From Octopus sinensis (lineage: Eukaryota): a stretch of 64,000 nt of DNA. The notes under the pieces are model-generated. The model had not been told where the DNA came from. It searched no databases and saw nothing but the letters and a program-made list of their open reading frames with translations. The stretch covers positions 56,246,464 through 56,310,463 of the forward strand of contig NC_043011.1 of NCBI RefSeq assembly GCF_006345805.1. Direction: 5' to 3'. Shown here piece after piece: positions 5,760 to 63,084 of this stretch (positions within the stretch are counted from its first letter, which is position 1; each line of letters starts with the position of its first letter). Made by a program: the position numbers and the translations under genes.

Positions 5760-6129
5760 GTACACGGCCCTCAATTATTCACCAACATCTTTTCAAAAAT
5801 ATTAACTGATTTCTCTATCTTCACTTTAATTAATATAATGATGTATTAGTTTAAGACATGTCAGGCAGCACCTCATCTGAGTTGAAATTCAGCTGGGGTC
5901 AGTTTTGTGTTTCATTCTTTTGGGATCAATCAAGTAACTACCAGTTGAGCAATAGGGGCCAATCTGGTCCCCTGAAATTTCTGGCTTGCCTTGTTCCTAA
6001 ATTTAAAATAATGATGTCTTGCTTTTACTAAAGGATTTTGATTCTAGATTTTTTTTATATTGTTTCCACCCATCTTCTCTCCTTCTGGAACAACAGAGAG
6101 TGTATTCCAGTGTTGATCGAATGTTGAAT

Positions 6130-6590
6130 CAATCATCATTGTTTAACGTCCGTTTTCCGTGCTAGCATGGGTTGGACGGTTCAACCGGGGTCTGGGAAGC
6201 CAGGAGGCTGCACCAGGCTCCAGTCTGATCTGGCAGTGTTTCTACAGCTTGATGCCCTTCCTAACGCCAACCACTCCGTGAGTGTAGTGGGTGCTTTTTA
6301 CGTGCCAACGGCACAGGTGCCAGGGCAGGCTGGCAGCGGCCACAATCGGTTGGTGCTTTTTATGTGCCACCGGCACAGAAGCCAGTCAAGGCGGGGCTGG
6401 CATCAGCCACGTTCAGATGGTGCTTTTTACGTGCCACCAGCACAGGTATCACAACTAAAATTTCCATTTGATTTTTATTTTGATGTTGATGTACTTGACT
6501 CAATAGGTCTCCCCAAGCACAGCAGGTCATGTGCCACCGGCACAGAAGCCAGTCAAGGTGGCGCTGGCATCGGCCACGTTCGGATGTGAA
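6130..6590 (-). mobile_element. 5'-truncated RTE LINE 3' end
   Basis: Homologous to the 30800-31233 3' UTR of the RTE fragment; (CAT)n tail. Confidence 0.85.
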
Positions 6591-8760: not shown

Positions 8761-9415
8761 AAAGAAAATGAAGAATGTGGCTATAGACCCATTATGTCTG
8801 TAAAAAACAGGGGATGGTCACTACTGAAATGCCTTTGCTTATAGGTTAACTGATCCAGGTCACAACTGACCAGAGTCTAAACAAAACATAGCTTAACGAG
8901 AAGTGCAGGTTGCTTCAGTTGTTAAATTGACCCTTAACCTTAAATAATGTTCACATTATTCTGCCAAAATTAATCCTTTTTTATCCACTTTGTTTTGAAC
9001 TAATCAGGCATTATCTTGTAGCTATGAGGTTTTGATGAGGTAGCTGTTAATTTTTAAAACGATATTGTAGGGTTGGTGTGAGAGACCAGATCTGGCCAGT
9101 TTGAACATAAAACAGGCAGAATACTTTTGGCCAGATGTGGCCAGTTTAAATGCTAAAGGGTTAAGTAAAATCTATCAAACTTAACAGAGCTGACTAATCC
9201 CTCTTTTGTGAGATTGTTTCTTAGTAAAATACTCCGAGTTTACAAACCAAGTGAATGTGTTTATGTAGCTTCGTTTCTGCTTAACTCTTTTCATATTTAA
9301 ATATTGTTACTTCACCTTCATAAGATTTATTCAAAAGAATTCTGTTTTCTTTCTAATAAGAACAACAACATTCTGATATGCTGTAAATGTTTCTCCAATG
9401 TTGCATCTATTCCAG

Positions 9416-9602
9416 CTGCCAGTATGAAAGGTGATCCTGGAGGAGCCACGACGCCAGCCAGTGCAGATCTGTCACCTGTCAGCCAAACGTCTCCCATAAG
9501 CATCAGTCCTCTAAGTTCAGGGGTCAATAGTCCTATTGCTGGAGCCACAGAAAAAGATGTCAATCCAGCCGTTCTTAAGATCCATAGCAGGAGATTTCGT
9601 GA
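9416..9602 (+). CDS. SECISBP2L: SBP2 exon ending at KIHSRRFRE
   Basis: ASMKGDPGG...PAVLKIHSRRFRE; KIHSRRFR(D/E) is the hallmark motif before the L7Ae module; gtaagt donor. Confidence 0.95.
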
Positions 9603-10534
9603 GTAAGTACTCTTCAAAATGTCTCTGAGTCGTTATTGTTATTTATTGCAACAACAATCTCCTTTGTTCTGTGTCTTAGATAAGTCTTGGCAACATTTAT
9701 CTGTTGACCATGACAGCTTAATGTCTAGAAAAGTACGCACAGTGAATTGGTTGGTGTTAGGAAAGGCATCCAGCTGTAAAAATCAGTGTCAGAGCAGACA
9801 CTGAAGCTGTGTACAGTCCTTTGGTTTCCATGCCAGCATGGAAAACAGTAATTCAATTGTGGTAATGATGATGGTGATGCTATGTACCTCATCCATCCCT
9901 CATCTCTTGAATTGGAACTTTCCTGTCCAGCTTCTCTGCTGAAGCTGCAATGATCCATGCTCAATCCAATTCACATTCTATCAACTTTAGACTAATCCAA
10001 AATTTGCTTATTCCATGCATCCGTCCAACCCATGCCAGCATGGAAAATGGATGTTAAGCGATGATGATGATGATGATGATTGTACCCTACTGACCTATTT
10101 GCTTTCAGATGTGCTGTTTCTCTTCTTTACCCAATCCTTTCTCCTTGGGGCTTTGACCGTCTGAAATTCCTTTCTAGACCTATTGAGTTATACATCAAAT
10201 ATTTAGGAGGATTTGCAAAAGTCATGGGTACTGCACTCAATGACTGTGGTTTCAATTCCTGGACCCAGCAGTGCACAGTGTTCTAGATTAAAACACTTCA
10301 TTTCACATTGCCCCAGTCAACTCAGCTATAAATGTATTCTGGCAATAGCTAGGATGGTAACGCCATGATGGACTAGCATCCCATCCAGGGGCAGAGTGAT
10401 TGTATTCTCAGTCACTTGGATATCCTGGAAACCAGGTCAAGTTGTGGCTTTGTATGTCCCAGGGCTCATGAAAGACCTTGTTGAAAAGAAATTGCATTTA
10501 TATCGTTTAATTAATTGTAATTAATATTTTGTAG

Positions 10535-10640: not shown

Positions 10641-11294
10641 GTAACAATTATCTCTCTCTCTCTATATATATCTCTCTCGTTGATATCTACTGACTACACA
10701 CTCTACTGAATTACATAGAAGAGAGTGTATAGATCTTTTAAATTGACCCTCAATATATTACTGGTTCTTATTTTATTGATGTAACAAATTTTGAACACAG
10801 AAGCAAAACCTACATGAATAGAAGGCATGGGTGTGTGATTCAGGAGTTTTGTTTTATTACAACAACCACAGGTTTCAGGTTCAATTCTCCTGCATGGCAC
10901 CTTAGACAAGTGTCTTCTACTATAGTATTAGGTAGACAAATAACGCAAGAGTGAAATTCGGTAGAGATAGTGGAAGCAAGGTTGGCGGAAAAATTAAATA
11001 CATACCAGATAGGGATCTTGTTAGGAATACTAGGATTACAAGTGTGATAAATTTTAACTGGGATGCTCACCAGAGCAGTGATAGTAGAAATAATTCCAGT
11101 AACATTAACAGTATGGAAGGATCAATGAACACTGCAAACACCTCCACTTCCCAATAAATGGAAGCTTAGACGAGATAAAGGAACATAGTTGTGCTGCATT
11201 CCAGAATAATAGGAATCCAAAGCTGAATATAAATGACCCCCACCCCCACTAACCGATGATAGGTATATAAAATACTTGCTGACTAAATTAACAG

Positions 11295-11570
11295 GCTGGC
11301 AGCAGCCACGATCGGTTGGTGCCAGTGGCACGTAAAAAGCACAAACCAATCGTGGCCGCTGCCAGCCTCCCCTGGCACCTGTGCCGGTGGCACGTAAAAG
11401 CACCCACTACACTCACGGAGTGGTTGGCGTTAGGAAGGGCATCCAGCTGTAGAAACATTGCCAGATCAGACTGGAGCCTGGTGCAGCCTCCTGGCTTCCC
11501 AGACCCCAGTCGAACTGTCCAGCCCATGCTAGCATGGAAAACGGACGTTAAACAACAATGATGATGATAC
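11295..11570 (+). mobile_element. RTE LINE 3' end copy
   Basis: GTGGCACGTAAAAGCACCCACTACAC...GCTAGCATGGAAAACGGACGTTAAAC + ATG repeats. Confidence 0.85.
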
Positions 11571-11994
11571 CAGAGGAAGACAATAAGAGTGGAGATGGGG
11601 GCAGCCATAACAGTAGAAATAGCACTTGATCATGATGGGAGCCGACCTACACTTGACAAAATAGGGAAGAGAAATGGAGCAAAAATACAAAAGATGATTG
11701 GTACAATACTCCCTTTGGGGTCCAAATTACAACAGACATCGCAAGGAAAATACCAATAGCAGCAAGAATATTGAAGCCTGCAATATAAAAGAGAAGCATA
11801 GTAATAAAAGAAATGAAAATAGAGAAATATTAGGAAGAGAGGCATCAGAGATGCTGGTGGAAATTATAAAGGTGGGGCTGATGATGATAATAATAAAGAC
11901 AATATGTATAAGAGTAGGTGTGATGATAGCAGGCTTAACCATAGGAGTAGGAGCTGCAACAGAAAAAAACAACTACAGGATTAATGATGATGAT

Positions 11995-12120: not shown

Positions 12121-12445
12121 TTTAACAAGAAAAGTAGTGATGATAATAATAGTAAAAATATTTGTAACTTTAGAAATTAGAATAAATGTCCATTAAATAA
12201 ACTATGCCTCAAGAAGAACAGTTTCTAAACTCTCACTCGTTACAGATAATAAAGTGTACTATTACACAGGTTGTTGCCCGGATTAATAATCCCTTATTAA
12301 TCTCCTTAGAATTTTTATCTATTCTCTTCATCTCCTAATTTTTTGCTCTTCAAACAAAATCTAAATTCCTAAATTAAAATATTTCCCACAATAAAATTAA
12401 TTCCACTTATTTCATTAAATGGATTTTGTTTTTCTATTTCTTCAG

Positions 12446-12560
12446 GCTAAAATGCGACGCCGTATTGTTCTGGGCCTAAGAGAAGTTACTAAACACCTTA
12501 AGCTTAAGAAACTGAAATGTGTTATTATTTCACCAAATCTTGAGAAAATTCAATCTAAAG
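12446..12560 (+). CDS. SECISBP2L: SBP2 exon, L7Ae domain
   Basis: AKMRRRIVLGLREVTKHLKLKKLKCVIISPNLEKIQSK; L7Ae kink-turn-binding signature GLREV.K. Confidence 0.97.
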
Positions 12561-13224
12561 GTCAGAAATATTTTTGCATTTGACAAAAAAAATTCTTTAT
12601 TGGTATATTTATACTTAATATATTCTGGCAGATTCCAACACAAAATATGTAAATCGCTGTTGTGTATGTCACAGAACACCAGCTCCTTTTCTGATGACCT
12701 TGTCCTAACACACTGATGTCCTAGAATCCTTTGCACCCATAAGCCAAGTGTTTTATGAACACATTGCCATCATTAAAGGGAGGAATTGCTTTCCTGTGAC
12801 GTACAGAACAGCGATTACCATATTTGTGTTCAAATCTGCCAGAATGTTTGAAGAACAAATATGCAAATTCTTGCCTACCTTTGATCTCTGAACTGGTGCA
12901 TTGGCCCCATTAGTTTGAACCATCAGGTACAGAGTTGTTTCTGCTAGAATCACATTGTTTAATCTGTGTATTGAGTATTTGAGCCAAAAATGTTATTTAA
13001 ATTTGAGTGTGCATGTGTATTTTAAATTTTTTGTAATATCTGGAATGCTGGTGAGTGGTGTCTTTAAAAAGACCTGATTCGTTAAAGGTGTGGCTCTGGA
13101 AGTACAACTGATGTCCAGGCAACCAGATTTTCATCTCTCTTAGTTTTTCCCCCTTTTATTCTGTTGGTTCAGTATGAATGAATTCTACCTGTCTTCACCC
13201 TGATGCAAGTCACATCAAGAGAGA

Positions 13225-14172: not shown

Positions 14173-14336
14173 TTGAGAAGCTAATCATATTTTGTCCTAT
14201 GTAATCGGGCTGAACACACAATTACCCCCAAAGTTTTCCTTTGGTAAAATAATCCAAGAACGTTTTACATGGTAAAATCCAAAAATATTGAAATTGCTTT
14301 TCAAAGTTGGTCAATTTCTGAAACTTTTCCTTTCAG

Positions 14337-14491
14337 GTGGCCTTGATGATGCACTGAATAACATCTTGAATCTTTGTACTGACCAGAATGTACCTTTTGT
14401 TTTTGCTCTGGGCCGTCGTGCTTTAGGACGAGCCTGTGCCAAATTAGTACCTGTCAGTGTTGTTGGAATATTCAATTATGAAGGCTCTGAG
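14337..14491 (+). CDS. SECISBP2L: SBP2 exon, L7Ae domain
   Basis: GLDDALNNILNLCTDQNVPFVFALGRRALGRACAKLVPVSVVGIFNYEGSE; ttcag / gtaacc. Confidence 0.97.
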
Positions 14492-14941
14492 GTAACCTTT
14501 TACACCTATTATTTATTTGATTGTCATCTGTTCTCATTTGTCATGTTTCTTTGCTTCCACAGAAACAATCATGTTAAATGAAGAACAGGCTATGGGTGGG
14601 GGGCAGGGACAAAGGAAACACTCATCATGATATAGTTTCGTGGTTAGAATAAGATTTAAAATAAACTTTGATAACAGATGATGAGTAAATAATGAGGAAA
14701 ACATATTTTCTCTTCACATGAAGCTTATTAATTGGTAATCTGTATGAAAAAAAAATATGCAGCCTCACAGCACAGTGATGTGGAGACAAGTGATAATCAG
14801 TGCATTGTGGACGGTTGCTTTTGTGGCCCAAGCAGAGTCTTTGACTGAGCGCTGACCCATGTTATAGATCAAGTTCACGATATGCATAACATGTACATTA
14901 TTTACATTTGATGGATATTTGTCCTCATCTTGTTTGTTGTT

Positions 14942-38340: not shown

Positions 38341-39418
38341 TATTTTGTTCATGTCAACAACTGCAATACACACACACACACATAATGTTGTTAAATCAGG
38401 AAGTGAATTGTCTTTAGTTCAACAGCAGCTGATGTAGTGAACAGTCCCTGAAGGCCTCCTTGTTGGTTAGTTCTGACATACCTGGTCCATAACTTAATAT
38501 TCTATTGGATTCTTAATTTTTAAAAATTAGGATTTCAATGCCTCAACAATTCCATTCTCTCCCTCACCAAATTCTTTCTCCTTTTGGCAGAAGCTTCTTT
38601 TGTACTTCAACACAGTTTTGCCAGGAATAAAACCATAGCAACAAATGTTTTTAAATATTTTGTTCCTCAAATTTCCTTTTTAGTCTTAAAATGGACAAAA
38701 AAAATAGACCCACATCATATTCTTTAGTTTAGCAATCACGGTAGTGATTTTGGGAATGGAATAAACAGTCAACATGTATTCTTATAAATCTAGCATTCAA
38801 CATTTTCCAGCTGCGTTTTAAAGTGTTGCTGCTTTTAAACCAAATTTCCGACCCATCAACACGAACTGCTTCAGGGGAAATATTTTTCCAATCAAACGTT
38901 TGCAGTTTACATCATTGATTTCTCTTTCTTCAAGTTTAGATCGATTAACCAAAGCTAAAAGTAAAACTGCCAAAGGAATGGGGGTGGGGATATGATTTAA
39001 ACAAATTGACAGGGGAGGATTTTTTTTATCTTTCTTTGAAGGATTTCAGTTTTTTTTTTTTTTTACTCCATAGTTTAACACGTCCATCTCATCATTCTGT
39101 GACATTGTTTTTGTACAAAGATTCCTTGTATTTGGAATATTTGTTTTGAGAAAATTTTACAGGTGAAAATGCTAGAGAACTTGAATCAAAAATCAATTTT
39201 TCACATCCCAACTCAATTCAAGATTCCCATGTTAAGGATTTAGATTCCTTGTAAATCCCAGACAATACAAACTGGCAGAGTGAATTACGGTGCTGCAGAG
39301 ATCTACCATTTCTTTTCTGAAGCAACAAATGAAATTTTTCAAATTCAATTAACTTATTTCTCATCAACTCATCAAAGCAAAATAATGCATGATTCAGCCC
39401 TGTAGCTCCTATCAAACC

Positions 39419-43164: not shown

Positions 43165-43955
43165 TGATGATGATCATCATCATCATCGTTTAATGTCCGC
43201 TTTCCCTGCTAGCATGGGTTGGACGAATGACTGAGGGCTGACGAACCAAATGGCCGCACCAGGTTTCAATCTTGATCTGGCAGAGTTTCTACAGCTGGAT
43301 GCCCTTCCTAACACCAATCACTCCGATGATGATGTCAGATAAGTTCAGTTAAACCCAGCAAGTGGCCTCAAAACGATCAAAACCCACTGAAATCCCTGCT
43401 TGCTTTAAATTGTCATTGTTTTGAGCCAAAGTTAAAAAATCTTCAGACTGTGTCTTATGAATGCGAGAGTTAATCTGTTCCAAGATCATCTGATTGTCAA
43501 AGATTTATGTATTTGAAATGATGGCCTCATGGGCCCAGCCCTTATAAAACAGCAGATAAACTGGTATCAAAAATATTCTTTAATTTCATTCACTAACACA
43601 CAAGTGGTTGGGTGCAAAAAAAGCTTTGGATTCACAACATCAATTGTGCTGGTGGCATGTGAAACATTCGAGCGAGGTTGTCGCCAGTGCCGCTGGACTA
43701 GCTCCTGTGCAGGTGGTACATAAAAGGCACCATTTGGGTGTGGCCATTGCCAGTACCACCAAACTGGCCATCATGCTGGTGGCACGTAAAAACACCCTCT
43801 ACACTCTCGGAGTGGTTGGCATTAGGAAGGGCATCCAGCTGTAGAAACTCTGCCAGATCAGATTGGAGCCTGGTTCGCCAAACCTCAGTCAAATCGTCCA
43901 ACCCATGCTAGCATGGAAAGCAGACATTAAATGATGATGATGATGATGATGATGA
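43165..43955. mobile_element. Two RTE 3'-end copies in inverted orientation (43165-43325 -, 43620-43955 +)
   Basis: Shared GCTAGCATGG / GGATGCCCTTCC blocks on opposite strands. Confidence 0.85.
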
Positions 43956-44589: not shown

Positions 44590-44760
44590 GCACCCACTAC
44601 ACTCTCAGGGTGGTTGGCGTTAGGAAGGGCATCCAGCTGTAGAAATATTGCCAGATCAAACTGGAGCCCGGTGCAGTATCCTGGCTTTCCAGACCCCAGT
44701 TGAACCATCCAACCCATGCCATCATGGAAAATGGACATTAAATGATGATGATGATGATCA
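44590..44760 (+). mobile_element. RTE 3'-end copy
   Basis: AGCACCCACTACACTCTC...(ATG)n. Confidence 0.8.
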
Positions 44761-46678: not shown

Positions 46679-48407
46679 TGTGTGTATGTGAGTAAAGAGA
46701 TAGATATATATATACACACATTGTGTGTATGTGAGTAAATGGATAGATTGATTGATAAACAGTTGTTCAAAAATCCATTATAGATCTTCAAGTAGTACAA
46801 CTAAATGTTTTCTTTAAGAAACACACACACACACACAAACACATCTACCTGTGTTACATGTATGACTCCACCATTATATTAGAACTTTATAGAATTGCAA
46901 GTTGGCAGTTCTCCAATAACTGTGATATTGATGAGACATTCAGGCTCTTGTTGTTAAGGGAAGCACCAAAGGACAGTAAATATATTTACATTACAAAATC
47001 TTTCAAAAACCAATCACCAGAAATATTGATAACGATCCGAGTGTTTTTAACTTTTTCGCTAATGACAATGATGTGTGTCTTTATGCAACAGTTACAGGTT
47101 ATAATGAGGATAATCAGAAAACCGTAAGCCCCACAACAATAGAGGAATATATAATTCAAAGAGATGGAGATTTGGTCAACATAAAATCATGTCTCACCAG
47201 GGCACAGCAGCCATTTACTTTAATCAAAAGACAGGCAAAGGCATGGCTGTGTGGTAAGAAGCTTGCTTTTTTCAACCAACCACATGGTTCTGGGTTCAGT
47301 TCTACTGCTTGACACCTTGGGCCCACCCAAGCCTTGTGAGTGGATTTGGTAGATGGGAGCTGAAAGAAACCAGGGCTGCAGTAGAAGACACTTGTCCTAA
47401 GTGCTGCACAGTGAGATTGATCCCAAGACCACAAGGTTGGGAAGCCATTCCTTTGCCTATTATGGACATAAAACCCTGAAAAACGCTTGGAAGCTAGTGT
47501 TTAGCTATTGAGTCCCAGCTATGTAGCATTGTTATTTTACATATTCTCTCAATGGATAGAAGCAGTCCTAACTGGGTCTTATTTGTAGTTACAACCCTCC
47601 TAGATGTGTTAGAGAACCAGATCTCACTTGTACATCTGTCCTATGGATGGATGCCCTTCCTTCACACAGTATGCGGATTGGATGTATTTTATTGTGACAC
47701 CAACACTAAAGAGGTTGTCATGTTATCGACAAGACAAGAATAAAGAATTGTCTTGACTCCTTATCATTTCCTTAAACAGGCGTCACAGAGAAATGATCTG
47801 CTCTGTTCCTGGAAGTCATATGAACTGAGCCAGTGAAGAATAAAATGGTAAGGTTGGTGCTGACATTTTTAATGGAGTGGACCAAGAAATTTTAATTCAT
47901 TTGAATTACACTGTTGGGAGAAGAAGGGAGATGACCCTAGAATTTTAATTAATTAGAGTTGAAAGTCAGTAATGGCATGCTGAGAAAGTAGGACCTGGCA
48001 AATTGTGGGGTTTGAACTTATTACCTCTATGTTGGCATTTCAATAGTTTATCCCCTTGACCAGTTCCCTCGTACCAATCTGTAAATCAACAACTAATATC
48101 ATAACTCAGTAGATTTAGAAACCTTTGCGGTGACATTATAGAATGAACTCTCAAGGTTTGGTCACCAAATAAGTCATGGTCTCATATCCTAATAATTTAT
48201 TTTGAAAAAATAATACTGCAAGCTCTTGTTTGTTTGTGTGTTTGTAAACACACACACACACACATCACACAAAAGACAAAAGATGTGATAGAAATCACCA
48301 TAATGTCGATATCTAAAAATATCCAATAAATCATTAACAGGTGGATTTATTAGTGTGATATATAACAGGTGGATTAGAGACATTCAAACATAATTCTTAA
48401 TACATTA

Positions 48408-48763
48408 TTATAATACATTACATAGACCACATCTCCAACGAGATGTCGCCCTGGCCACATTAGTTCTGGACAGAGTCCTTGCATGGTTGCTGTTATGCGT
48501 GGTCAATTGTTCGTTCATTTCTTGGTGAGGATTCAATGAACCTACGTGATGTTCCTCATGTGTTGTTTCTAAAGATGGAGAGACTTCGTTAACTTCATTA
48601 CTAGTTTGATTGGGTTTTACAGAACTGGGAACAAATGATTTGGATTCTGTTGTACTTTTGCTATTCTCATCGTTAATAAAATAATGTGAAATTCGGTGGA
48701 TAATCTCCTTGTATTTATCCGCCAAGTCAGCAGTCATACCTGAGCTTCCATGTCCCCCAATAC
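48408..48763 (-). CDS. Death + TIR_2 protein, terminal exon ending in CaaX motif
   Basis: tttgcag acceptor; GIGGHGSSGMTADLADKYKEIIHRI...SRWRCGLCNVL followed by TAA TAA; phase 1 joins the 50880 exon. Confidence 0.9.
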
Positions 48764-49124: not shown

Positions 49125-49620
49125 ACGTGGGAAGACCCGGCAGGACAAGTGAGACCATAACCCGTGGCCTCTACCTGGGACATAGCCAGTCCACTTATGC
49201 ATACCTTTCCTTCTTGTGACACAAACCCTACTTGTGAAGACCTGTTGAGGCAAGTGAAAATCAAAATCAAAATCGATCAACATCAATGGAAATTGTAGCT
49301 GTAATACCAGTGCCGGTGGCACGTAAGAGAACCATCTGAACGTGCCCGTTGCCAGCGCCGCCCCGACTGGCCTCCGTGTCGGTGGCACGTAAAAAGCACC
49401 ATCCGATCATGGCCATTTGCCAGCCTCACCTGGCACCTGTGCCAGTGGCACATAAAAAGCACCCACTACACTCACGGAGTGGTTGGCATCAGGAAGGCAT
49501 CCAGCTGTAGAAACTGCCAGATCAGACTGGGCCTGGTGCAGCCATCTGGTTCGCTAGTACTCAGTCAAATCATCCAACCCATGCTAGCATGGAAAATGGA
49601 TGTTAAATGATGATGATGAT
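49125..49620 (+). mobile_element. RTE 3'-end copy in last intron of TIR gene
   Basis: Homologous to 30740-31233. Confidence 0.88.
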
Positions 49621-50419: not shown

Positions 50420-50830
50420 TCATCATCATTATCATCATCATTGTTTAACGTCCGCTTTCCATGCTAGCATGGGTTGGACGAATGACTGAGGGCTGGTGAA
50501 CCAGATGGCTGCACCAGGCTTCAATCTTGATCTGGCAGAGTTTCTACAGCTGGATGCCCTTCATAACGCCAACCACTCCGAGAGTGTAGTGGGTGCTTTT
50601 ACGTGCCAGTCAGGCGGTACTGGCAATGACCTCGCTCGAATCTTTTACACATGCCACCGGCACAGGTGCCAGTAATTTCGATGCTGGTAACGATCACACT
50701 CGAATGGTGCCTTTTAAGTGCCACTGGCAAGGAAGCCGGTTAGCCACTCTGTCAATGATCACACTTGTATGGTGCTCTTTGCACCCCGCTAGCACGGACG
50801 CCATTCATTGAATTTGACTTGGTCACTTGA
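50420..50830 (-). mobile_element. RTE 3'-end copy, inverted relative to 49125 copy
   Basis: (CAT)n + GTTTAACGTCCGCTTTCCATGCTAGC. Confidence 0.88.
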
Positions 50831-50879: not shown

Positions 50880-51057
50880 CGTTCATGTCAATATATACAA
50901 GGTTGGAAAAGATGAGTGCCATGCCACCCGGTGGAGGCCAGACGATACTTTCAAACATCACAGGGAGGATAGGTTTCCGCAGACCATCAGCTAAGCTCAG
51001 TTCGCGGTTGCAGAGATGAGATATGACATACTTGGGTGTAACGCAGGCCAATATAAT
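50880..51057 (-). CDS. Death + TIR_2 protein, TIR C-terminal half
   Basis: IILACVTPKYVISHLCNRELSLADGLRKPILPVMFESIVWPPPGGMALIFSNLVYIDMN; ttttag / gttagt; phase 0 joins the 62252 exon. Not in the ORF track. Confidence 0.93.
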
Positions 51058-51289: not shown

Positions 51290-52500
51290 ATCCAATTCTT
51301 TATTCCTAGGACCACATGCAAGACAGGTTACTTATTTTGGATATTCTAAAGGGAGCACACCCACACCCATAGTTTGGCTCTGTAGGGGGAGAACAGTCTG
51401 GCAAACACAAGCCATGCCATGGACAAGTCCAGGAAGGAACTGATGGAGATCTTCAAAGAATTCATCCTATCTATAATAGTCTTTAACAATTTGACAAAGG
51501 CTAACTTCCTGGACTTGAAGATAGACTTGAAGATGGACAAATATTATCCATACAGGAGGCTCAACAAGGAAACAGGTTACGTCCACAAAAACTCTAAGCA
51601 CCCCCCACACACTTTAATTAGAAACCTAGTCACAGGCATAGGTAAAAGAATCACTAAATTTTCAGAAGAGCTCTTCAATGGTCCCCACCCTCCATTATAA
51701 CTAGGTATTAGAAGAGTGGATTCACTGAGAAGTTAATATATGGAAGACATCCCACTCCTGCACCCAATAAGAGTCAGAAAAAGAAGATAATCTGGTTCAA
51801 TCCTTCATCTAACCTAGAAGTTTCAACCAATATAGCTAAGAGCTTCCTGATGCTTATTAATAGACATTTTTCTAAAACGCATAAGTAAACATTATAAACT
51901 TTTCAACCCCCACATTAAGGTCAGTTAATCCTGCTTATACAATATTGCTTCTAACATCACACATTACAATAGACACAAGCACACACCTACACAGCCTCTA
52001 GCCTATATTCCAACCTGTAACTGTCAAAATACTACCTACTGCCCACTGGGAGGATCTTACCTCACAAGAGTTGTGGCCCATTCGGTCTTGTGAACACTAT
52101 CCAATGGTATCACAAGACACTACACAACATATGTACTCCTCCAGGTGCAGGGATGGGGGCAACTGTACCTCCCTGTCCTGCTTTATCTGCAGACTTTGCA
52201 ACCATCAGAACAACTCCCCCAATATTGAATGGAATATCAACAGGACTCTACCTTACTCACCTGGAACTTGCAATTGCCAACTCTGCCTCAACGAGAGACT
52301 ATATATTTTCCATCAACAGAAACAATTAACTACCTCATTGTTGCCACGAGAGGTATATCTTGCTAAGGCACTTCAAGCCACTGGCTGCTGACAATCCAAA
52401 CATACCACCACAGGCCTGCCTCTTCTGTTCACAAGGACAGAGTATGTAACCTCTGCTGCCTGTATAAACCACAGCCTCATCATCCTACAGAAACATTGTT
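51290..52500 (+). mobile_element. Penelope-like element fragment (RT C-terminus + GIY-YIG region)
   Basis: NFLDLKIDL...YYPYRR...YVHKNSKHPP; KIIWFNP; CNC...CPL; CQLCLNERLYI; degenerate. Confidence 0.88.
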
Positions 52501-56071: not shown

Positions 56072-56228
56072 CAGCATCTAATGTCAGCTTCCCATGCTGG
56101 TATGGGCTATGTACACACACACACGTGTATCACCATCATCATCATCATCATCATCATCACCACAACCACCACCATCATCAATAGCAGCAGCAGCATTTCA
56201 CACATATTTGCCATGCTGGCATGGGTTT

Positions 56229-56255
56229 TATATATATATACATATATAAACACAC

Positions 56256-56292
<37 letters not shown>

Positions 56293-56566
56293 TATATATA
56301 TACACACACACACACATATATATATACACACACACATATATATATACATACACATATATATATACATACACATATATATATACACACTATATATATATAT
56401 ATTATATATATATATATATACATATATATATACACACATATATATACACATATATATATATATATACATATATATACACATATATATATTATACACATAT
56501 ATATATACACACACATATATATATATATATACATACACATATATATATACATACACATATATATAT

Positions 56567-56611
<45 letters not shown>

Positions 56612-56792
56612 TATATACACACACGTATATATATACACATATATATATATATACATATATATATACACATATATATATTATACACATATATATATATACA
56701 CACATATATATATATATATATATATAATATATATATATATATACATACACATATATATATATACACATATATATATACACACACATATATAA

Positions 56793-56824
<32 letters not shown>

Positions 56825-56837
56825 CACACACACACAC

Positions 56838-56868
<31 letters not shown>

Positions 56869-56870
56869 CT
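56229..56870. repeat. Compound (TA)n/(CA)n microsatellite, about 640 bp
   Basis: Direct inspection; explains the long Y/I/H/T ORFs. Confidence 0.98.
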
Positions 56871-57319
56871 TTATTTAAAGCAGCAGAAAATTCTACAAAA
56901 CCTGTTTCCCAATATCACTCCTACTACTTATACAACACCGAGACACCAAAGGTCACTGGTGAACAATGAAAGAAAAAACAAAAACAGAAAAACAAAGAGA
57001 CTTGCAAGAAGCAAATATTTTTACTTTATGTAAAAAAAGAAAAAATTCCAATAAAATAAAATAAGCAGTAAATATTGGTAAATCTTGTAAAGAGTTCACT
57101 GAGAGCAGAATTGGAAGATAGTGTCTTGGGAGCAAAATAGCAGACTATGCTGTCAAGTTACTCAGGGAAGCCATCTGCTTGAAAAAACAATAGTTAGTCT
57201 TCTAATTACAATTATGTTGAGATGTAAAAAATGCTTTATAGGATTATTAAAATGATTCCAGTAATTAATTCTAAATTAATGAAAGGCAGAGGAGAGAATA
57301 TAAACACTCTTAGTGGTCA

Positions 57320-57875
57320 TCATCATCATCATCATCATCATTTAGCGTCCGCTTTCCATGCTAGCATGGGTTGGACGGTTCAACTGGGGTCTGTGAAGCT
57401 GGAAGGCTTCGTCAGGCCCAGTCAGATCTGGCAGTGTTTCTACGGCTGGATGCCCTTCCTAACGCCAACCACTCCGTGAGTGTAGTGGGTGCTTTTTACA
57501 TGCCACCCGCACAGGTGCCAGACAGAGCTGGCCCATGCCAGACAGAGCTGGCGTCAAGAAAAAAAAACATTCATGTGAGGTCGTTGCCAGTGCCGCTGGA
57601 CTGGCTCCTGTAAAGGTGGCACATAAAAAGCACCATTTGAGCGTGGCCGTTGCCAGTACTGCCTGACTGGCCCTCGTGCCGGTGGCACGTAAAAGCACCC
57701 ACTACACTCTCAGAGTGGTTGGTGTTAGGAAGGGCATCCAGCTGTAGAAACTCTGCCAGATCAAGATTGGAGCCTGGTGCAGCCATCTGGTTTGCCAGTC
57801 CTCAGTCAAATCATCCAACCCATACTAGCATGGAAAACAGACGTTAAACGATGATGATGATGATGATGATGATGA
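57320..57875. mobile_element. Head-to-head RTE 3'-end pair forming a foldback
   Basis: - copy 57320-57555 and + copy 57570-57875 with (CAT)n/(ATG)n outer tails. Confidence 0.9.
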
Positions 57876-62251: not shown

Positions 62252-62427
62252 CTTGCAATTCCGAATTCCTTGTTCGATCTTGTTGTAGAGCTGGTCACCA
62301 CCACCCATCTGGCCAATGTCCATCCAACAAGAGATCCCAGCTCTTTCCAGCCTGTCCCACAGAGCCTTCACTGCATCTTGACTGTCCCACTGGTAACTGA
62401 TGAACACTTGTGGGCAGTGGGATTGTT
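62252..62427 (-). CDS. Death + TIR_2 protein, TIR N-terminal half
   Basis: QSHCPQVFISYQWDSQDAVKALWDRLERAGISCWMDIGQMGGGDQLYNKIEQGIRNCK: VFISY box 1 and WMD..QMGGGD of TIR_2; ttccag / gtgaga. Confidence 0.93.
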
Positions 62428-62557: not shown

Positions 62558-62605
<48 letters not shown>

Positions 62606-62840
62606 GCTACTACTACTACTACTGCTGCTTCCAAAGTATACACAGAGCCTAATCAAATAAATGCTTTTAGTCTAAAAGTCCTGACATGATTTTGCTAATC
62701 TGCTACTTTGAAAGATTTAATTAAATATATTAATATCACGTTATTAAAACAATACCTTTATTTATTTACATTTTATCTACTTATTTTTTAAAATTTTATC
62801 TATTCTATTTTTTTGTTTGTTTGTTTGTTTGTTTACTTAC

Positions 62841-63014
62841 CTCTGCTCTGTTTCAGAAGATCTATGATGTCATACCTGGACATTTTCTCCAAGAAGGTGT
62901 GCAATACATCCACAGACACCTGTGTGTTGCCGCTGCCAAGAATCCAGTCAGTGAGCAGAGCAAGTGATGGATTTAAATCATTATTAAATTTATCGATTTT
63001 CGGTTTCTTATAAC
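62841..63014 (-). CDS. Death-domain + TIR_2 protein, Death-domain exon (gene starts beyond window)
   Basis: GYKKPKIDKFNNDLNPSLALLTDWILGSGNTQVSVDVLHTFLEKMSRYDIIDLLKQSR fits Death-fold helices 3-6 (LL.DW...TV..L...L..M.R.D..DLL); gtaagt donor; alternative acceptor at 63039 possible. Confidence 0.8.
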
Positions 63015-63084
63015 CTGAATTGACAACAAATTTAGGAGGCTGTGAATTTAACAGCATTTTTTTTTTACACTTAACATAAAATGT

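What the first reader, a model, noticed from the sequence alone, without database searches (positions are those of the whole stretch)
48408..48440. Death-TIR protein ends in a CaaX prenylation box (RCGLCNVL-stop)
The terminal exon reads ...SRWRCGLCNVL followed by TAA TAA. Established: C-a-a-L is the typical geranylgeranyltransferase-I substrate, and a nearby upstream Cys is often palmitoylated; a basic patch (RATSRWR) precedes it. Known TIR adaptors reach membranes by PIP2 binding (TIRAP) or myristoylation (TRAM). Inference: this is a TIR signalling protein anchored by a C-terminal lipid through a roughly 90-residue disordered linker, a mode I do not know from characterised TIR proteins.
Basis: partly seen in the sequence, partly recalled or inferred. 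Interest (0 to 1): 0.7.

Follow-up and report, generated by a model that had tools for sequence, protein, structure and literature searches.

The report
Lipid-anchored TIR immune protein tail
The octopus gene really does end in a lipid-attachment signal (…RCGLCNVL-stop), and the same signal is kept at the very end of its counterparts from molluscs to amphioxus, which suggests that a whole group of invertebrate TIR immune-type proteins is tethered to membranes by a prenyl lipid, a mode I found described nowhere in the papers searched.

Summary
Observation confirmed. On the minus strand, 48405-48440 reads R-W-R-C-G-L-C-N-V-L-TAA-TAA, at the end of a properly spliced terminal exon.

It is identical to Octopus sinensis XP_029645983.1 (LOC115219837, "uncharacterized"). 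The domain order is Neuralized repeat, Roc, COR, Death, TIR_2, a roughly 80-residue linker predicted to be disordered, then CxxCaaL.

A single CaaX box could be chance; its conservation is not.
- All 17 counterparts of this architecture examined, from seven animal groups, keep Cys at -7 and -4.
- In the same proteins, linker identity is only 4-15%, against 41-68% in the TIR domain.
- Of the 145 relatives from the first two searches, 101 have Cys at exactly -4, and a2 is always hydrophobic.
- Related families (TIR-TIR, TIR-Death-TIR, ankyrin-TIR, short TIR-only) also end in CaaX, usually after S-[RK]-x.

Best reading: the protein is geranylgeranylated at Cys1264, with a second signal at Cys1261, probably palmitate. 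This would tether a Death/TIR module to membranes. The TIR is of the SARM1/AbTIR type and keeps the catalytic Glu.

Lipidation itself is untested. One O. vulgaris gene model splices to another last exon (39221-39316) and loses the box. I found no paper describing a prenylated TIR protein.

The parts
48408..48763 (-). Terminal coding exon. It encodes the end of the TIR domain (GIGGHGSSG...ADKYKEIIHRISHYF), the linker, CxxCaaL and the stop codon (TAA 48408-48410).
   Evidence: The acceptor is ttttgcag and the exon is in frame with the upstream exon. Homologues align across the junction (YIDMNG|IGGHG). It is identical to O. sinensis XP_029645983.1.
48411..48422 (-). CaaX box C-N-V-L. The Cys is residue 1264 in O. 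sinensis numbering and is the predicted geranylgeranylation site.
   Evidence: Translation. Cys at -4 occurs in 101 of 145 homologues and in 17 of 17 counterparts of this architecture.
48429..48431 (-). Upstream Cys at position -7 (Cys1261), a candidate S-palmitoylation site.
   Evidence: Invariant in all 17 counterparts. Related families have Ser at this position in 114 of 122 cases.
48432..48671 (-). Linker of about 80 residues between the TIR domain and the lipidation motif. It is predicted to be disordered and diverges quickly.
   Evidence: pLDDT is below 50 for nearly all of residues 216-298. Identity to counterparts in other phyla is 4-15%. All 6 differences from O. bimaculoides fall here.
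50880..51057 (-). Middle TIR_2 exon (IILACVTPKYVISHLCNRELSLADGLRKPILPV...). It contains the invariant Glu (E1109) that aligns with the catalytic Glu of NADase-type TIR domains.
   Evidence: E144 of the fragment is invariant and aligns with the Glu of AbTIR 'NYEL' and the Glu of Cat1.
62252..62427 (-). First TIR_2 exon (EQSHCPQVFISYQWDSQ...IRNCK).
   Evidence: Pfam TIR_2 matches at E=2.4e-24.
62841..63014 (-). Exon for the C-terminal half of the Death domain (GYKKPKIDKFNNDLNPSLALLTDW...KQSR). Earlier exons (Neuralized, Roc, COR, Death N-terminal half) lie beyond the window end.
   Evidence: Pfam Death matches at 6.9e-5. Identity to the octopus proteins starts at GYKKPK, which implies the acceptor ...aattcag|. 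tblastn finds no further exon in the window.
48541..48552 (-). Candidate internal 5' splice site CAC|GTAGGT inside the terminal exon. The last exonic base is 48546.
   Evidence: This is the point where the O. vulgaris model CAI9735787.1 diverges (…EEHH|KRNG…).
39218..39316 (-). Alternative last exon used by the O. vulgaris gene model (KRNGRSLQHRNSLCQFVLSGIYKESKSLTWES-stop). Using it removes the last 43 residues, including the CaaX box.
   Evidence: tblastn gives 100% identity over 32 aa. The acceptor is tttgttgcttcag and the exon ends in TGA. There is no evidence here that it is expressed.

Best explanation
The window carries the 3' end of Octopus LOC115219837, a 1267-aa protein with the order Neuralized repeat, Roc GTPase, COR, Death, TIR_2, flexible linker of about 80 residues, then R-C-G-L-C-N-V-L.

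The terminal C-N-V-L is a functional CaaX box. The proposed sequence of events is:
1. Cytosolic geranylgeranyltransferase-I attaches a C20 isoprenoid to Cys1264, because X is Leu.
2. The -NVL tripeptide is removed and the new C-terminus is methylated at the ER (the standard RCE1/ICMT route).
3. Cys1261, three residues upstream and next to Arg, supplies the second membrane signal, most likely S-palmitate.

The result would be a Death/TIR module held on a flexible leash at the cytosolic face of a membrane. From there it could meet receptor TIR domains or assemble into higher-order Death/TIR complexes. Because the TIR is of the SARM1/AbTIR type and keeps the catalytic Glu, it might also cleave NAD+ locally.

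Shown here: the motif, its exact placement, its conservation, the predicted disorder of the linker, and the domain architecture. Inferred: the lipid attachment, which lipid, the palmitoylation, which membrane, and the TIR activity.
For: The motif and gene model are confirmed and are identical to RefSeq XP_029645983.1.

Counterparts of the same architecture from Mollusca (3 Octopus species, Elysia, Dreissena, Sinanodonta), Annelida, Nemertea, Chelicerata (ticks, mites, spiders), Myriapoda, Echinodermata and Cephalochordata all end [R/K/Q/N]-C-x-[V/I/L/A]-C-a-a-[L/I/V]. Identity to the octopus protein is 41-68% in the TIR domain but 4-15% in the linker.

Counting Cys by position from the C-terminus in 145 homologues gives 101 at -4, 24 at -7, and 7 or fewer elsewhere. 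a2 is I, L, V, M or F in all 101. X is L 45, M 32, I 12, S 9. This is the profile expected of prenyltransferase substrates.

Of 115 homologues with a full-length tail, 98 end in CXXX. Across all 282 sequences fetched, 184 do. Only the distance from the C-terminus is conserved across families with different N-terminal domains, which is what a CaaX signal requires and a metal or redox site does not.

Related families that lack the second Cys carry S-[R/K]-x before the Cys instead. This is at most weakly reminiscent of the palmitate-versus-polybasic alternatives of Ras proteins (established knowledge), because the basic enrichment is modest.

The linker is predicted to be disordered. All 6 octopus-to-octopus substitutions fall in the linker, and none in the last 10 residues.

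Short intron-free contigs in other species encode Death-TIR-tail-CaaX without interruption, for example P0151 (1305 aa on a 4245-nt contig) and P0042 (472 aa on 1610 nt). These are probably transcripts.
Against: No lipid has been detected; everything rests on sequence.

a1 is Asn, which is not aliphatic. This position is tolerant, and relatives also have CNLL, CNIL and CNVM.

The O. vulgaris model CAI9735787.1 leaves the terminal exon at an internal GTAGGT and ends in a different exon at 39221-39316, without the box. If that isoform dominates, most of the protein would be soluble.

Position -7 is Ser in 114 of 122 single-Cys relatives. This position may therefore be conserved for a reason other than palmitoylation, such as phosphorylation or chaperone recognition.

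The basic patch is weak in counterparts from other phyla, often a single K or R.
Confidence: 0.8

Rival explanations
1. The CaaX-ending isoform is real but is one of two. Alternative splicing from the internal donor (last base 48546) to the exon at 39221-39316 would produce a soluble protein without the lipid signal. Membrane anchoring would then be regulated by isoform choice, as with prenylated and non-prenylated isoforms of other immune proteins.
For: The O. vulgaris protein CAI9735787.1 diverges exactly after …EEHH and continues with 32 residues that are encoded with 100% identity at 39221-39316. That exon lies behind a good acceptor, is in frame and ends in TGA. The divergence point in the window is a consensus-like donor, CAC|GTAGGT.
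Against: This is a single gene model from one annotation. The O. sinensis and O. bimaculoides RefSeq models and two older O. bimaculoides models all end in CNVL. The alternative tail matched nothing else in the window in the one search made with it, and it was not searched against any protein database. No transcript data were available here.
Confidence: 0.25
2. The two terminal cysteines form a metal-binding or redox CxxC site and are not lipidated.
For: C-x-x-C is invariant in the 17 counterparts examined. CxxC is a common half-site for zinc and a common redox motif (established knowledge).
Against: Related families keep only one Cys, always at exactly -4 from the stop, with Ser at -7. The three residues after it follow the aliphatic/X rules of CaaX in all 101 cases. 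The motif sits at the end of a linker predicted to be disordered, with no further ligands nearby. A metal or redox site has no reason to keep a fixed distance from the C-terminus.
Confidence: 0.04
3. The box is modified by farnesyl rather than, or as well as, geranylgeranyl.
For: Some CaaL boxes with a polar or charged a1 and Val at a2 accept both lipids; RhoB CKVL is an example (established knowledge). Related families end in M or S, which are farnesyltransferase-type X residues.
Against: Within the group sharing this architecture, X is L in 15 of 17, I in 1 and V in 1. That is the GGTase-I preference.
Confidence: 0.2
4. The ending is a chance CaaX-like sequence with no function.
For: By my estimate from general knowledge, about one protein in fifty to a hundred ends in CXXX by chance. 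The single octopus sequence alone cannot exclude this.
Against: It is conserved in 17 of 17 counterparts across seven animal groups, next to a linker at random-level identity. Cys is at -4 in 101 of 145 homologues.
Confidence: 0.01

Closest known systems
MyD88 (Death-TIR adaptor), including Drosophila MyD88 with its C-terminal phosphoinositide-binding extension
   Same: The Death domain lies N-terminal to the TIR domain. In arthropod MyD88 a C-terminal extension after the TIR localises the protein to membranes (PMC7075850, citing Marek and Kagan 2012). An Aplysia protein described with a ROCO domain, probably of this family, has been listed as 'MyD88-like with ROCO domain' (PMC9334734).
   Different: The TIR is of the TIR_2 type: 86.6 bits to PF13676, against 20.3 bits to PF01582, which is below that model's cut-off. 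The closest Death domain is NRADD/p75NTR, not MyD88. The protein has about 945 further N-terminal residues (Neuralized, Roc, COR). The proposed anchor is a covalent prenyl lipid, not a lipid-binding domain.
TIRAP/Mal (PIP2 binding) and TRAM (N-myristoylation), the sorting adaptors of TLR signalling
   Same: They are TIR proteins positioned at membranes by a lipid-based signal, so that they can meet receptor TIR domains (established knowledge).
   Different: Their signals are N-terminal, either a lipid-binding motif or a myristate. Here the signal is C-terminal and of the CaaX type, separated from the TIR by a linker of about 80 residues. There is no sequence relationship beyond the TIR fold.
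SARM1 and bacterial AbTIR (NAD+-cleaving TIR domains)
   Same: They are the closest solved TIR domains by profile, sequence and fold. The Glu of 'CNRE' aligns with the Glu in AbTIR 'NYEL', which I take to be the catalytic one from memory of the AbTIR literature. It also aligns with the Cat1 Glu. It is invariant in the family.
   Different: They have no CaaX box. SARM1 has ARM-SAM-TIR architecture. NADase activity of the octopus TIR is untested.
ROCO proteins with a Death domain (DAPK1); LRRK1/2, MFHAS1
   Same: They share the Roc-COR GTPase core. DAPK1 also has a C-terminal Death domain (established knowledge; for the octopus protein).
   Different: Pfam found no kinase domain in the octopus protein, despite UniRef's automatic name 'non-specific serine/threonine protein kinase'. 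It has an N-terminal Neuralized repeat, a TIR domain and a CaaX box.
Prenylated innate-immunity proteins: GBP1/2/5, and the OAS1 prenylated isoform
   Same: They are immune effectors targeted to membranes by a C-terminal CaaX box (PMC6400534 for the GBPs; Wickenhagen et al. 2021 for OAS1, cited in PMC9334734). From memory, prenylation of OAS1 depends on which terminal exon is spliced in. That would be a possible parallel to the alternative exon at 39221-39316.
   Different: The folds and activities are unrelated (dynamin-like GTPase, oligoadenylate synthetase). None has a TIR or Death domain.
Dual-lipidated small GTPases (H-Ras, N-Ras, RhoB) and polybasic-plus-prenyl ones (K-Ras4B)
   Same: They have a hypervariable, disordered C-terminal region that ends in CaaX, with a second signal just upstream. 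That signal is either palmitoylatable Cys or basic residues (established knowledge). The ROCO-Death-TIR group has the Cys. Related families have S-[RK]-x, in some cases within a Lys-rich stretch such as KKKSKTC.
   Different: The cargo is a 1267-aa multidomain protein, and the linker is about four times longer than a Ras hypervariable region.

Membership tests
CaaX prenylation substrates (GGTase-I / FTase) | Cysteine exactly four residues from the C-terminus | tested here: met
   C-N-V-L-stop. The same position holds Cys in 101 of 145 homologues.
CaaX prenylation substrates (GGTase-I / FTase) | a2 aliphatic, and X = Leu for GGTase-I | tested here: met
   a2 is Val and X is Leu. In the family, a2 is I, L, V, M or F in all 101, and X is L in 15 of 17 counterparts of this architecture.
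CaaX prenylation substrates (GGTase-I / FTase) | Flexible, accessible segment upstream of the box | tested here: met
   AlphaFold2 gives pLDDT below 50 for nearly all of residues 216-298. This is a prediction only.
CaaX prenylation substrates (GGTase-I / FTase) | Covalent isoprenoid on the Cys, with -aaX cleavage and methylation | not testable with these tools
   This needs metabolic labelling or mass spectrometry.
MyD88 family | Death domain followed by TIR domain | tested here: met
   Pfam Death followed by TIR_2.
MyD88 family | MyD88-type TIR (PF01582 class, Boxes 1-3) and MyD88-type Death domain | tested here: not met
   PF01582 scores 20.3 bits, below its 21.3 cut-off, while TIR_2 scores 86.6 bits. 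In the PDB profile search the MyD88 Death domain scores 1.8e-4, against NRADD at 2.6e-9. The TIR hits are Cat1, SARM1 and bacterial TIRs.
ROCO proteins | Roc GTPase domain followed by COR | tested here: met
   This was tested on the 98%-identical O. bimaculoides protein: Roc 9e-11, COR-A 5.9e-18. These exons lie outside the window, so the test was not made on the window DNA itself.
NAD+-cleaving TIR domains (SARM1/AbTIR type) | Conserved catalytic Glu in the TIR active site | tested here: met
   E144 of the fragment (E1109) is invariant and aligns with the Glu of AbTIR and of Cat1.
NAD+-cleaving TIR domains (SARM1/AbTIR type) | NAD+ hydrolase or cyclase activity | not testable with these tools
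   This needs an enzyme assay.
S-palmitoylated CaaX proteins (H-Ras/RhoB type) | Cys within a few residues upstream of the prenylated Cys | tested here: met
   Cys at -7, invariant in the 17 counterparts. Acylation itself is not testable here, and related families have Ser at this site.

The most novel reading that the evidence does not exclude
A 'TIR_2 - disordered linker - CaaX' module is an old, bilaterian-wide unit that has been combined with different N-terminal sensor or adaptor domains: Neuralized-ROCO-Death, Death-TIR, TIR-Death, ankyrin, or none. Prenyl anchoring would then be the main way this large invertebrate TIR clade is placed at membranes. It would be a fourth mode of TIR-protein membrane targeting, beside transmembrane receptors, PIP binding and myristoylation. 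Anchoring could be switchable by alternative last exons or by modification at position -7. If the TIR is an active NADase, this would be a membrane-localised NAD+-consuming or signal-producing immune enzyme under the control of a Roc GTPase.
Probability: 0.45. Interest if true: 0.8.

Novelty: new variant of a known kind. Interest (0 to 1): 0.62.

Why it matters
How TIR adaptors reach the right membrane decides where and when Toll-type signalling starts. The known solutions are phosphoinositide binding (TIRAP, fly MyD88) and myristoylation (TRAM).

A conserved CaaX anchor on a large, uncharacterised invertebrate TIR clade would add a new solution. It would also give a concrete handle on proteins that comparative immunology papers have only catalogued as 'ecTIR-DC' or 'MyD88-like with ROCO'.

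The idea is directly testable with a Cys-to-Ser mutant, prenyltransferase inhibitors and clickable isoprenoids.

It also matters for annotation. Domain databases do not flag CaaX boxes, so this feature is invisible in current records. UniRef's automatic name for these proteins, 'serine/threonine protein kinase', appears to be wrong.

Tried and rejected
- The two word-index protein searches returned no cephalopod protein, even though octopus proteins are in the collection. They surfaced only through the exhaustive representative search and the cluster look-up.
- An exact look-up of the 109-aa ORF of the terminal exon found no contig, so no octopus transcript contig could be examined.
- My first model of the Death exon started at 63039 (PPKFVVNS...). 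The octopus proteins show that the real acceptor is 25 nt downstream, so the exon starts at 63014.
- Gerdol et al. 2017, the ecTIR-DC classification, is not held. I could not assign the family number or check whether that paper mentions the C-terminus.
- Searches combining TIR with prenylation, CaaX, farnesyl or geranylgeranyl terms returned only unrelated papers: Ras/ICMT in TLR signalling, GBPs and reviews.
- I considered a tail-anchor transmembrane helix and rejected it, because only 3-4 hydrophobic residues are present. I considered a peroxisomal PTS1 and rejected it, because there is no SKL-like end. I considered Rab-type CXC/CC geranylgeranylation and rejected it, because there is no Rab fold and the Cys spacing is fixed at -4.
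- The third word-index search was not spent on the tail, because close relatives seem to be withheld from that tool.
- Retroelement-like ORFs in the 11-kb intron gave no Pfam hit.

Full report
**1. What is in the sequence**

The finding lies on the minus strand. The reverse complement of 48405-48440 reads CGT TGG AGA TGT GGT CTA TGT AAT GTA TTA TAA TAA, which is R-W-R-C-G-L-C-N-V-L-stop-stop. The open frame runs back to a good splice acceptor (ttttgcag) at 48763.

Three further exons upstream have AG/GT borders and join in frame: 50880-51057, 62252-62427 and 62841-63014. The spliced 302-residue fragment matches Pfam TIR_2 (E=2.4e-24) and Death (6.9e-5). tblastn with relatives finds only these four exons in the window.

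**2. Which gene it is**

The two word-index searches returned no cephalopod. The exhaustive representative search returned P0148, which ends …SRWRCGLCNVL. The cluster look-up identifies it as Octopus bimaculoides XP_052830315.1. Its cluster mates are:
- O. sinensis XP_029645983.1 (LOC115219837, 'uncharacterized protein', 1267 aa)
- O. vulgaris CAI9735787.1

From GYKKPK onward the window product is 100% identical to residues 974-1267 of the O. sinensis protein. It is 98% identical to the O. bimaculoides protein. The window therefore holds only the last four coding exons.

The full-length O. bimaculoides protein, in the same cluster as the O. sinensis one, has the order Neuralized homology repeat, Roc, COR-A, Death, TIR_2. 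UniRef's automatic name, 'non-specific serine/threonine protein kinase', is not supported, because Pfam finds no kinase domain.

**3. Is the CaaX box more than chance?**

A single CXXL end is unremarkable.

- *Counterparts of the same architecture.* I aligned 17 of them from Mollusca (Octopus, Elysia, Dreissena, Sinanodonta), Annelida (Lamellibrachia), Nemertea (Tubulanus), Chelicerata (ticks, mites, spiders), Myriapoda (Strigamia), Echinodermata (Asterias) and Cephalochordata (Branchiostoma). All end [R/K/Q/N]-C-x-[V/I/L/A]-C-a-a-[L/I/V].
- *Identity to the octopus protein outside the genus.* It is 41-68% in the TIR domain, 29-60% in the Death domain and only 4-15% in the linker.
- *Linker length.* It is fairly constant, at 109-152 residues after the WPP motif, apart from Elysia.
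- *Between the two Octopus species.* All six substitutions lie in the linker. None lies in the folded domains or in the last ten residues.
- *Across the 145 homologues.* Cys occurs at -4 in 101, at -7 in 24, and in 7 or fewer at every other one of the last 12 positions.
- *The box itself.* a2 is I, L, V, M or F in all 101. X is L 45, M 32, I 12, S 9.
- *Tail completeness.* Of 115 homologues with at least 70 residues after the last WPP motif, 98 end in CXXX. Many of the rest look like truncated or suspect models.
- *With the representative-search hits added.* 184 of 282 sequences end in CXXX.

**4. The anchor belongs to a TIR clade, not to one architecture**

The same TIR_2 type (FISYQW…WMDIGQMGGGD…WPP) ends in CaaX in several other architectures:
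- Death-TIR-TIR proteins of bivalves, gastropods, echinoderms and hemichordates (…KSKSCVLL)
- TIR-Death-TIR proteins, seen in rotifers and in many unnamed metagenome contigs; the CaaX endings (…SRACSLM) come from the unnamed contigs
- Ankyrin-TIR proteins of amphioxus (…SRSCVII)
- Many short TIR-only proteins

In these single-Cys families position -7 is Ser in 114 of 122, and -6 is R or K in 72 of 122.

What is conserved across all of them is a Cys at a fixed distance from the C-terminus, followed by an aliphatic residue. That is the defining property of a prenylation signal. It argues against a metal or redox CxxC site.

The two cnidarian hits examined (Actinia, Desmophyllum) and an unnamed Roc-COR-TIR protein (P0141) lack the box.

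**5. Structure**

AlphaFold2 with the 17-sequence alignment folds the Death and TIR domains, with 10-residue block means of pLDDT of about 61-86. Nearly all of residues 216-298 stay below 50. This agrees with a flexible leash of about 80 residues.

Foldseek against the PDB puts SARM1 TIR first, followed by SPARTA, Hydra TRR-2, plant TIRs, MyD88 TIR, AbTIR and Cat1. By sequence and by profile, the closest solved TIRs are AbTIR, Cat1, SARM1 and other bacterial TIRs. The closest Death domains are NRADD and p75NTR.

The invariant Glu of 'CNRE' (E1109) aligns with the Glu in AbTIR 'NYEL' and with the Cat1 Glu. That these are the catalytic residues is from my memory of that literature. NADase activity is therefore plausible but untested.

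**6. How it most likely works**

Shown here: a canonical, deeply conserved CaaL box, preceded by a conserved Cys and a basic residue, at the end of a tail predicted to be disordered, on a Roc-COR-Death-TIR protein.

Inferred from established prenylation biochemistry:
- GGTase-I adds geranylgeranyl to Cys1264.
- RCE1 and ICMT process the end.
- Cys1261 is palmitoylated as the second membrane signal.

The Death/TIR module would then be held at a membrane, where it can join receptor TIRs or assemble signalling oligomers. The Roc-COR GTPase and the Neuralized (SPRY-like) repeat are likely regulatory or sensing parts. Which membrane is involved, which partners bind, and whether the TIR acts as a scaffold or as an enzyme all remain open.

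**7.

The O. vulgaris model CAI9735787.1 departs from the others after …EEHH and ends …KRNGRSLQHRNSLCQFVLSGIYKESKSLTWES. That peptide is encoded with 100% identity at 39221-39316 on the minus strand, behind a good acceptor and before a TGA. The departure point in the window is CAC|GTAGGT, with 48546 as the last exonic base.

This may be a genuine alternative isoform without the anchor, or an annotation artefact. The other four octopus models end in CNVL. I could not examine RNA data. The conservation of the CNVL end shows that the anchored form is under selection, whatever the status of the other isoform.

**8. Comparison with what is known**

The domain combination has been noticed in catalogues:
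- 'MyD88-like with ROCO domain' in Aplysia (PMC9334734)
- A 'neuralized'-Roc-COR-Death-TIR_2 combination in Strigamia and Crassostrea (PMC5094078)
- The 'ecTIR-DC' classes (PMC6321704)

None of the papers I could read mentions a C-terminal lipid signal. Full-text searches combining TIR with prenylation terms found nothing relevant.

The protein works like the lipid-targeted sorting adaptors TIRAP, TRAM and fly MyD88, and like prenylated immune effectors such as the GBPs (PMC6400534). It is not a member of those families, and it fails the MyD88 test on TIR and Death type.

**9. Verdict**

The finding is a new variant of a known kind: CaaX anchoring applied to TIR signalling proteins. It is conserved across most invertebrate phyla sampled and is readily testable. 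Interest is 0.62.

Noticed in passing
window 39218-39316 (-) and 48541-48552 (-): An alternative last exon and an internal donor are used by the O. vulgaris gene model CAI9735787.1. Using them would remove the CaaX box and could give a soluble isoform.
   Followed up: partly
homologues P0004-P0036, P0092-P0270: In single-Cys CaaX relatives, position -7 is Ser in 114 of 122 and position -6 is R or K in 72 of 122 (S-[RK]-x-C-a-a-X). The ROCO-Death-TIR group has Cys at the same position. The Ser/Cys equivalence is unexplained. It could be a phosphorylation or acylation switch, or a recognition element.
   Followed up: partly
window 12419-12580 (+) and 14276-14578 (+); possibly also 1248-1712 and 9301-9603 (+): These are exons of a plus-strand neighbouring gene with a ribosomal L7Ae/L30e-type RNA-binding domain (Pfam E=5e-18 on the two joined exons). 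From memory it resembles SECIS-binding protein 2; this was not tested.
   Followed up: partly
window, many sites, e.g. 6128-6586, 11291-11629, 43793-43947, 44591-44758, 49125-49607, 50490-50808, 57228-57801: A SINE-like repeat occurs in both orientations. Its pseudo-ORF reads …HHHH…SVFHASMGWTVQLGSGKPGGCTRLQSDLAVFLQLDALPNANHSVSVVGAFY. Copies lie in the introns of the TIR gene.
   Followed up: no
window 51386-52388 (+), inside the 11-kb intron between the two TIR exons: ORF fragments with Cys-rich motifs (…CNCQNTTYCPLGG…, …CNCQLCLNERLYIF…) look like a degraded mobile element. They gave no Pfam hit.
   Followed up: partly
window 56081-56878 and 62560-62640: A long (TA/CA)-rich microsatellite lies at about 56.1-56.9 kb. 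An (AGT)n run lies in the intron between the Death and TIR exons.
   Followed up: no
P0088: A protein labelled 'MAG: TIR domain-containing protein [Sedimenticola sp.]' belongs to this animal TIR clade and ends in …SKSCSIL. It is probably host (invertebrate) DNA binned into a bacterial metagenome-assembled genome.
   Followed up: no
UniRef names: Several proteins of this family carry the automatic name 'non-specific serine/threonine protein kinase'. In those scanned, Pfam finds Neuralized, Roc, COR, Death and TIR_2 but no kinase domain. This is probably rule-based over-annotation from the ROCO family.
   Followed up: partly
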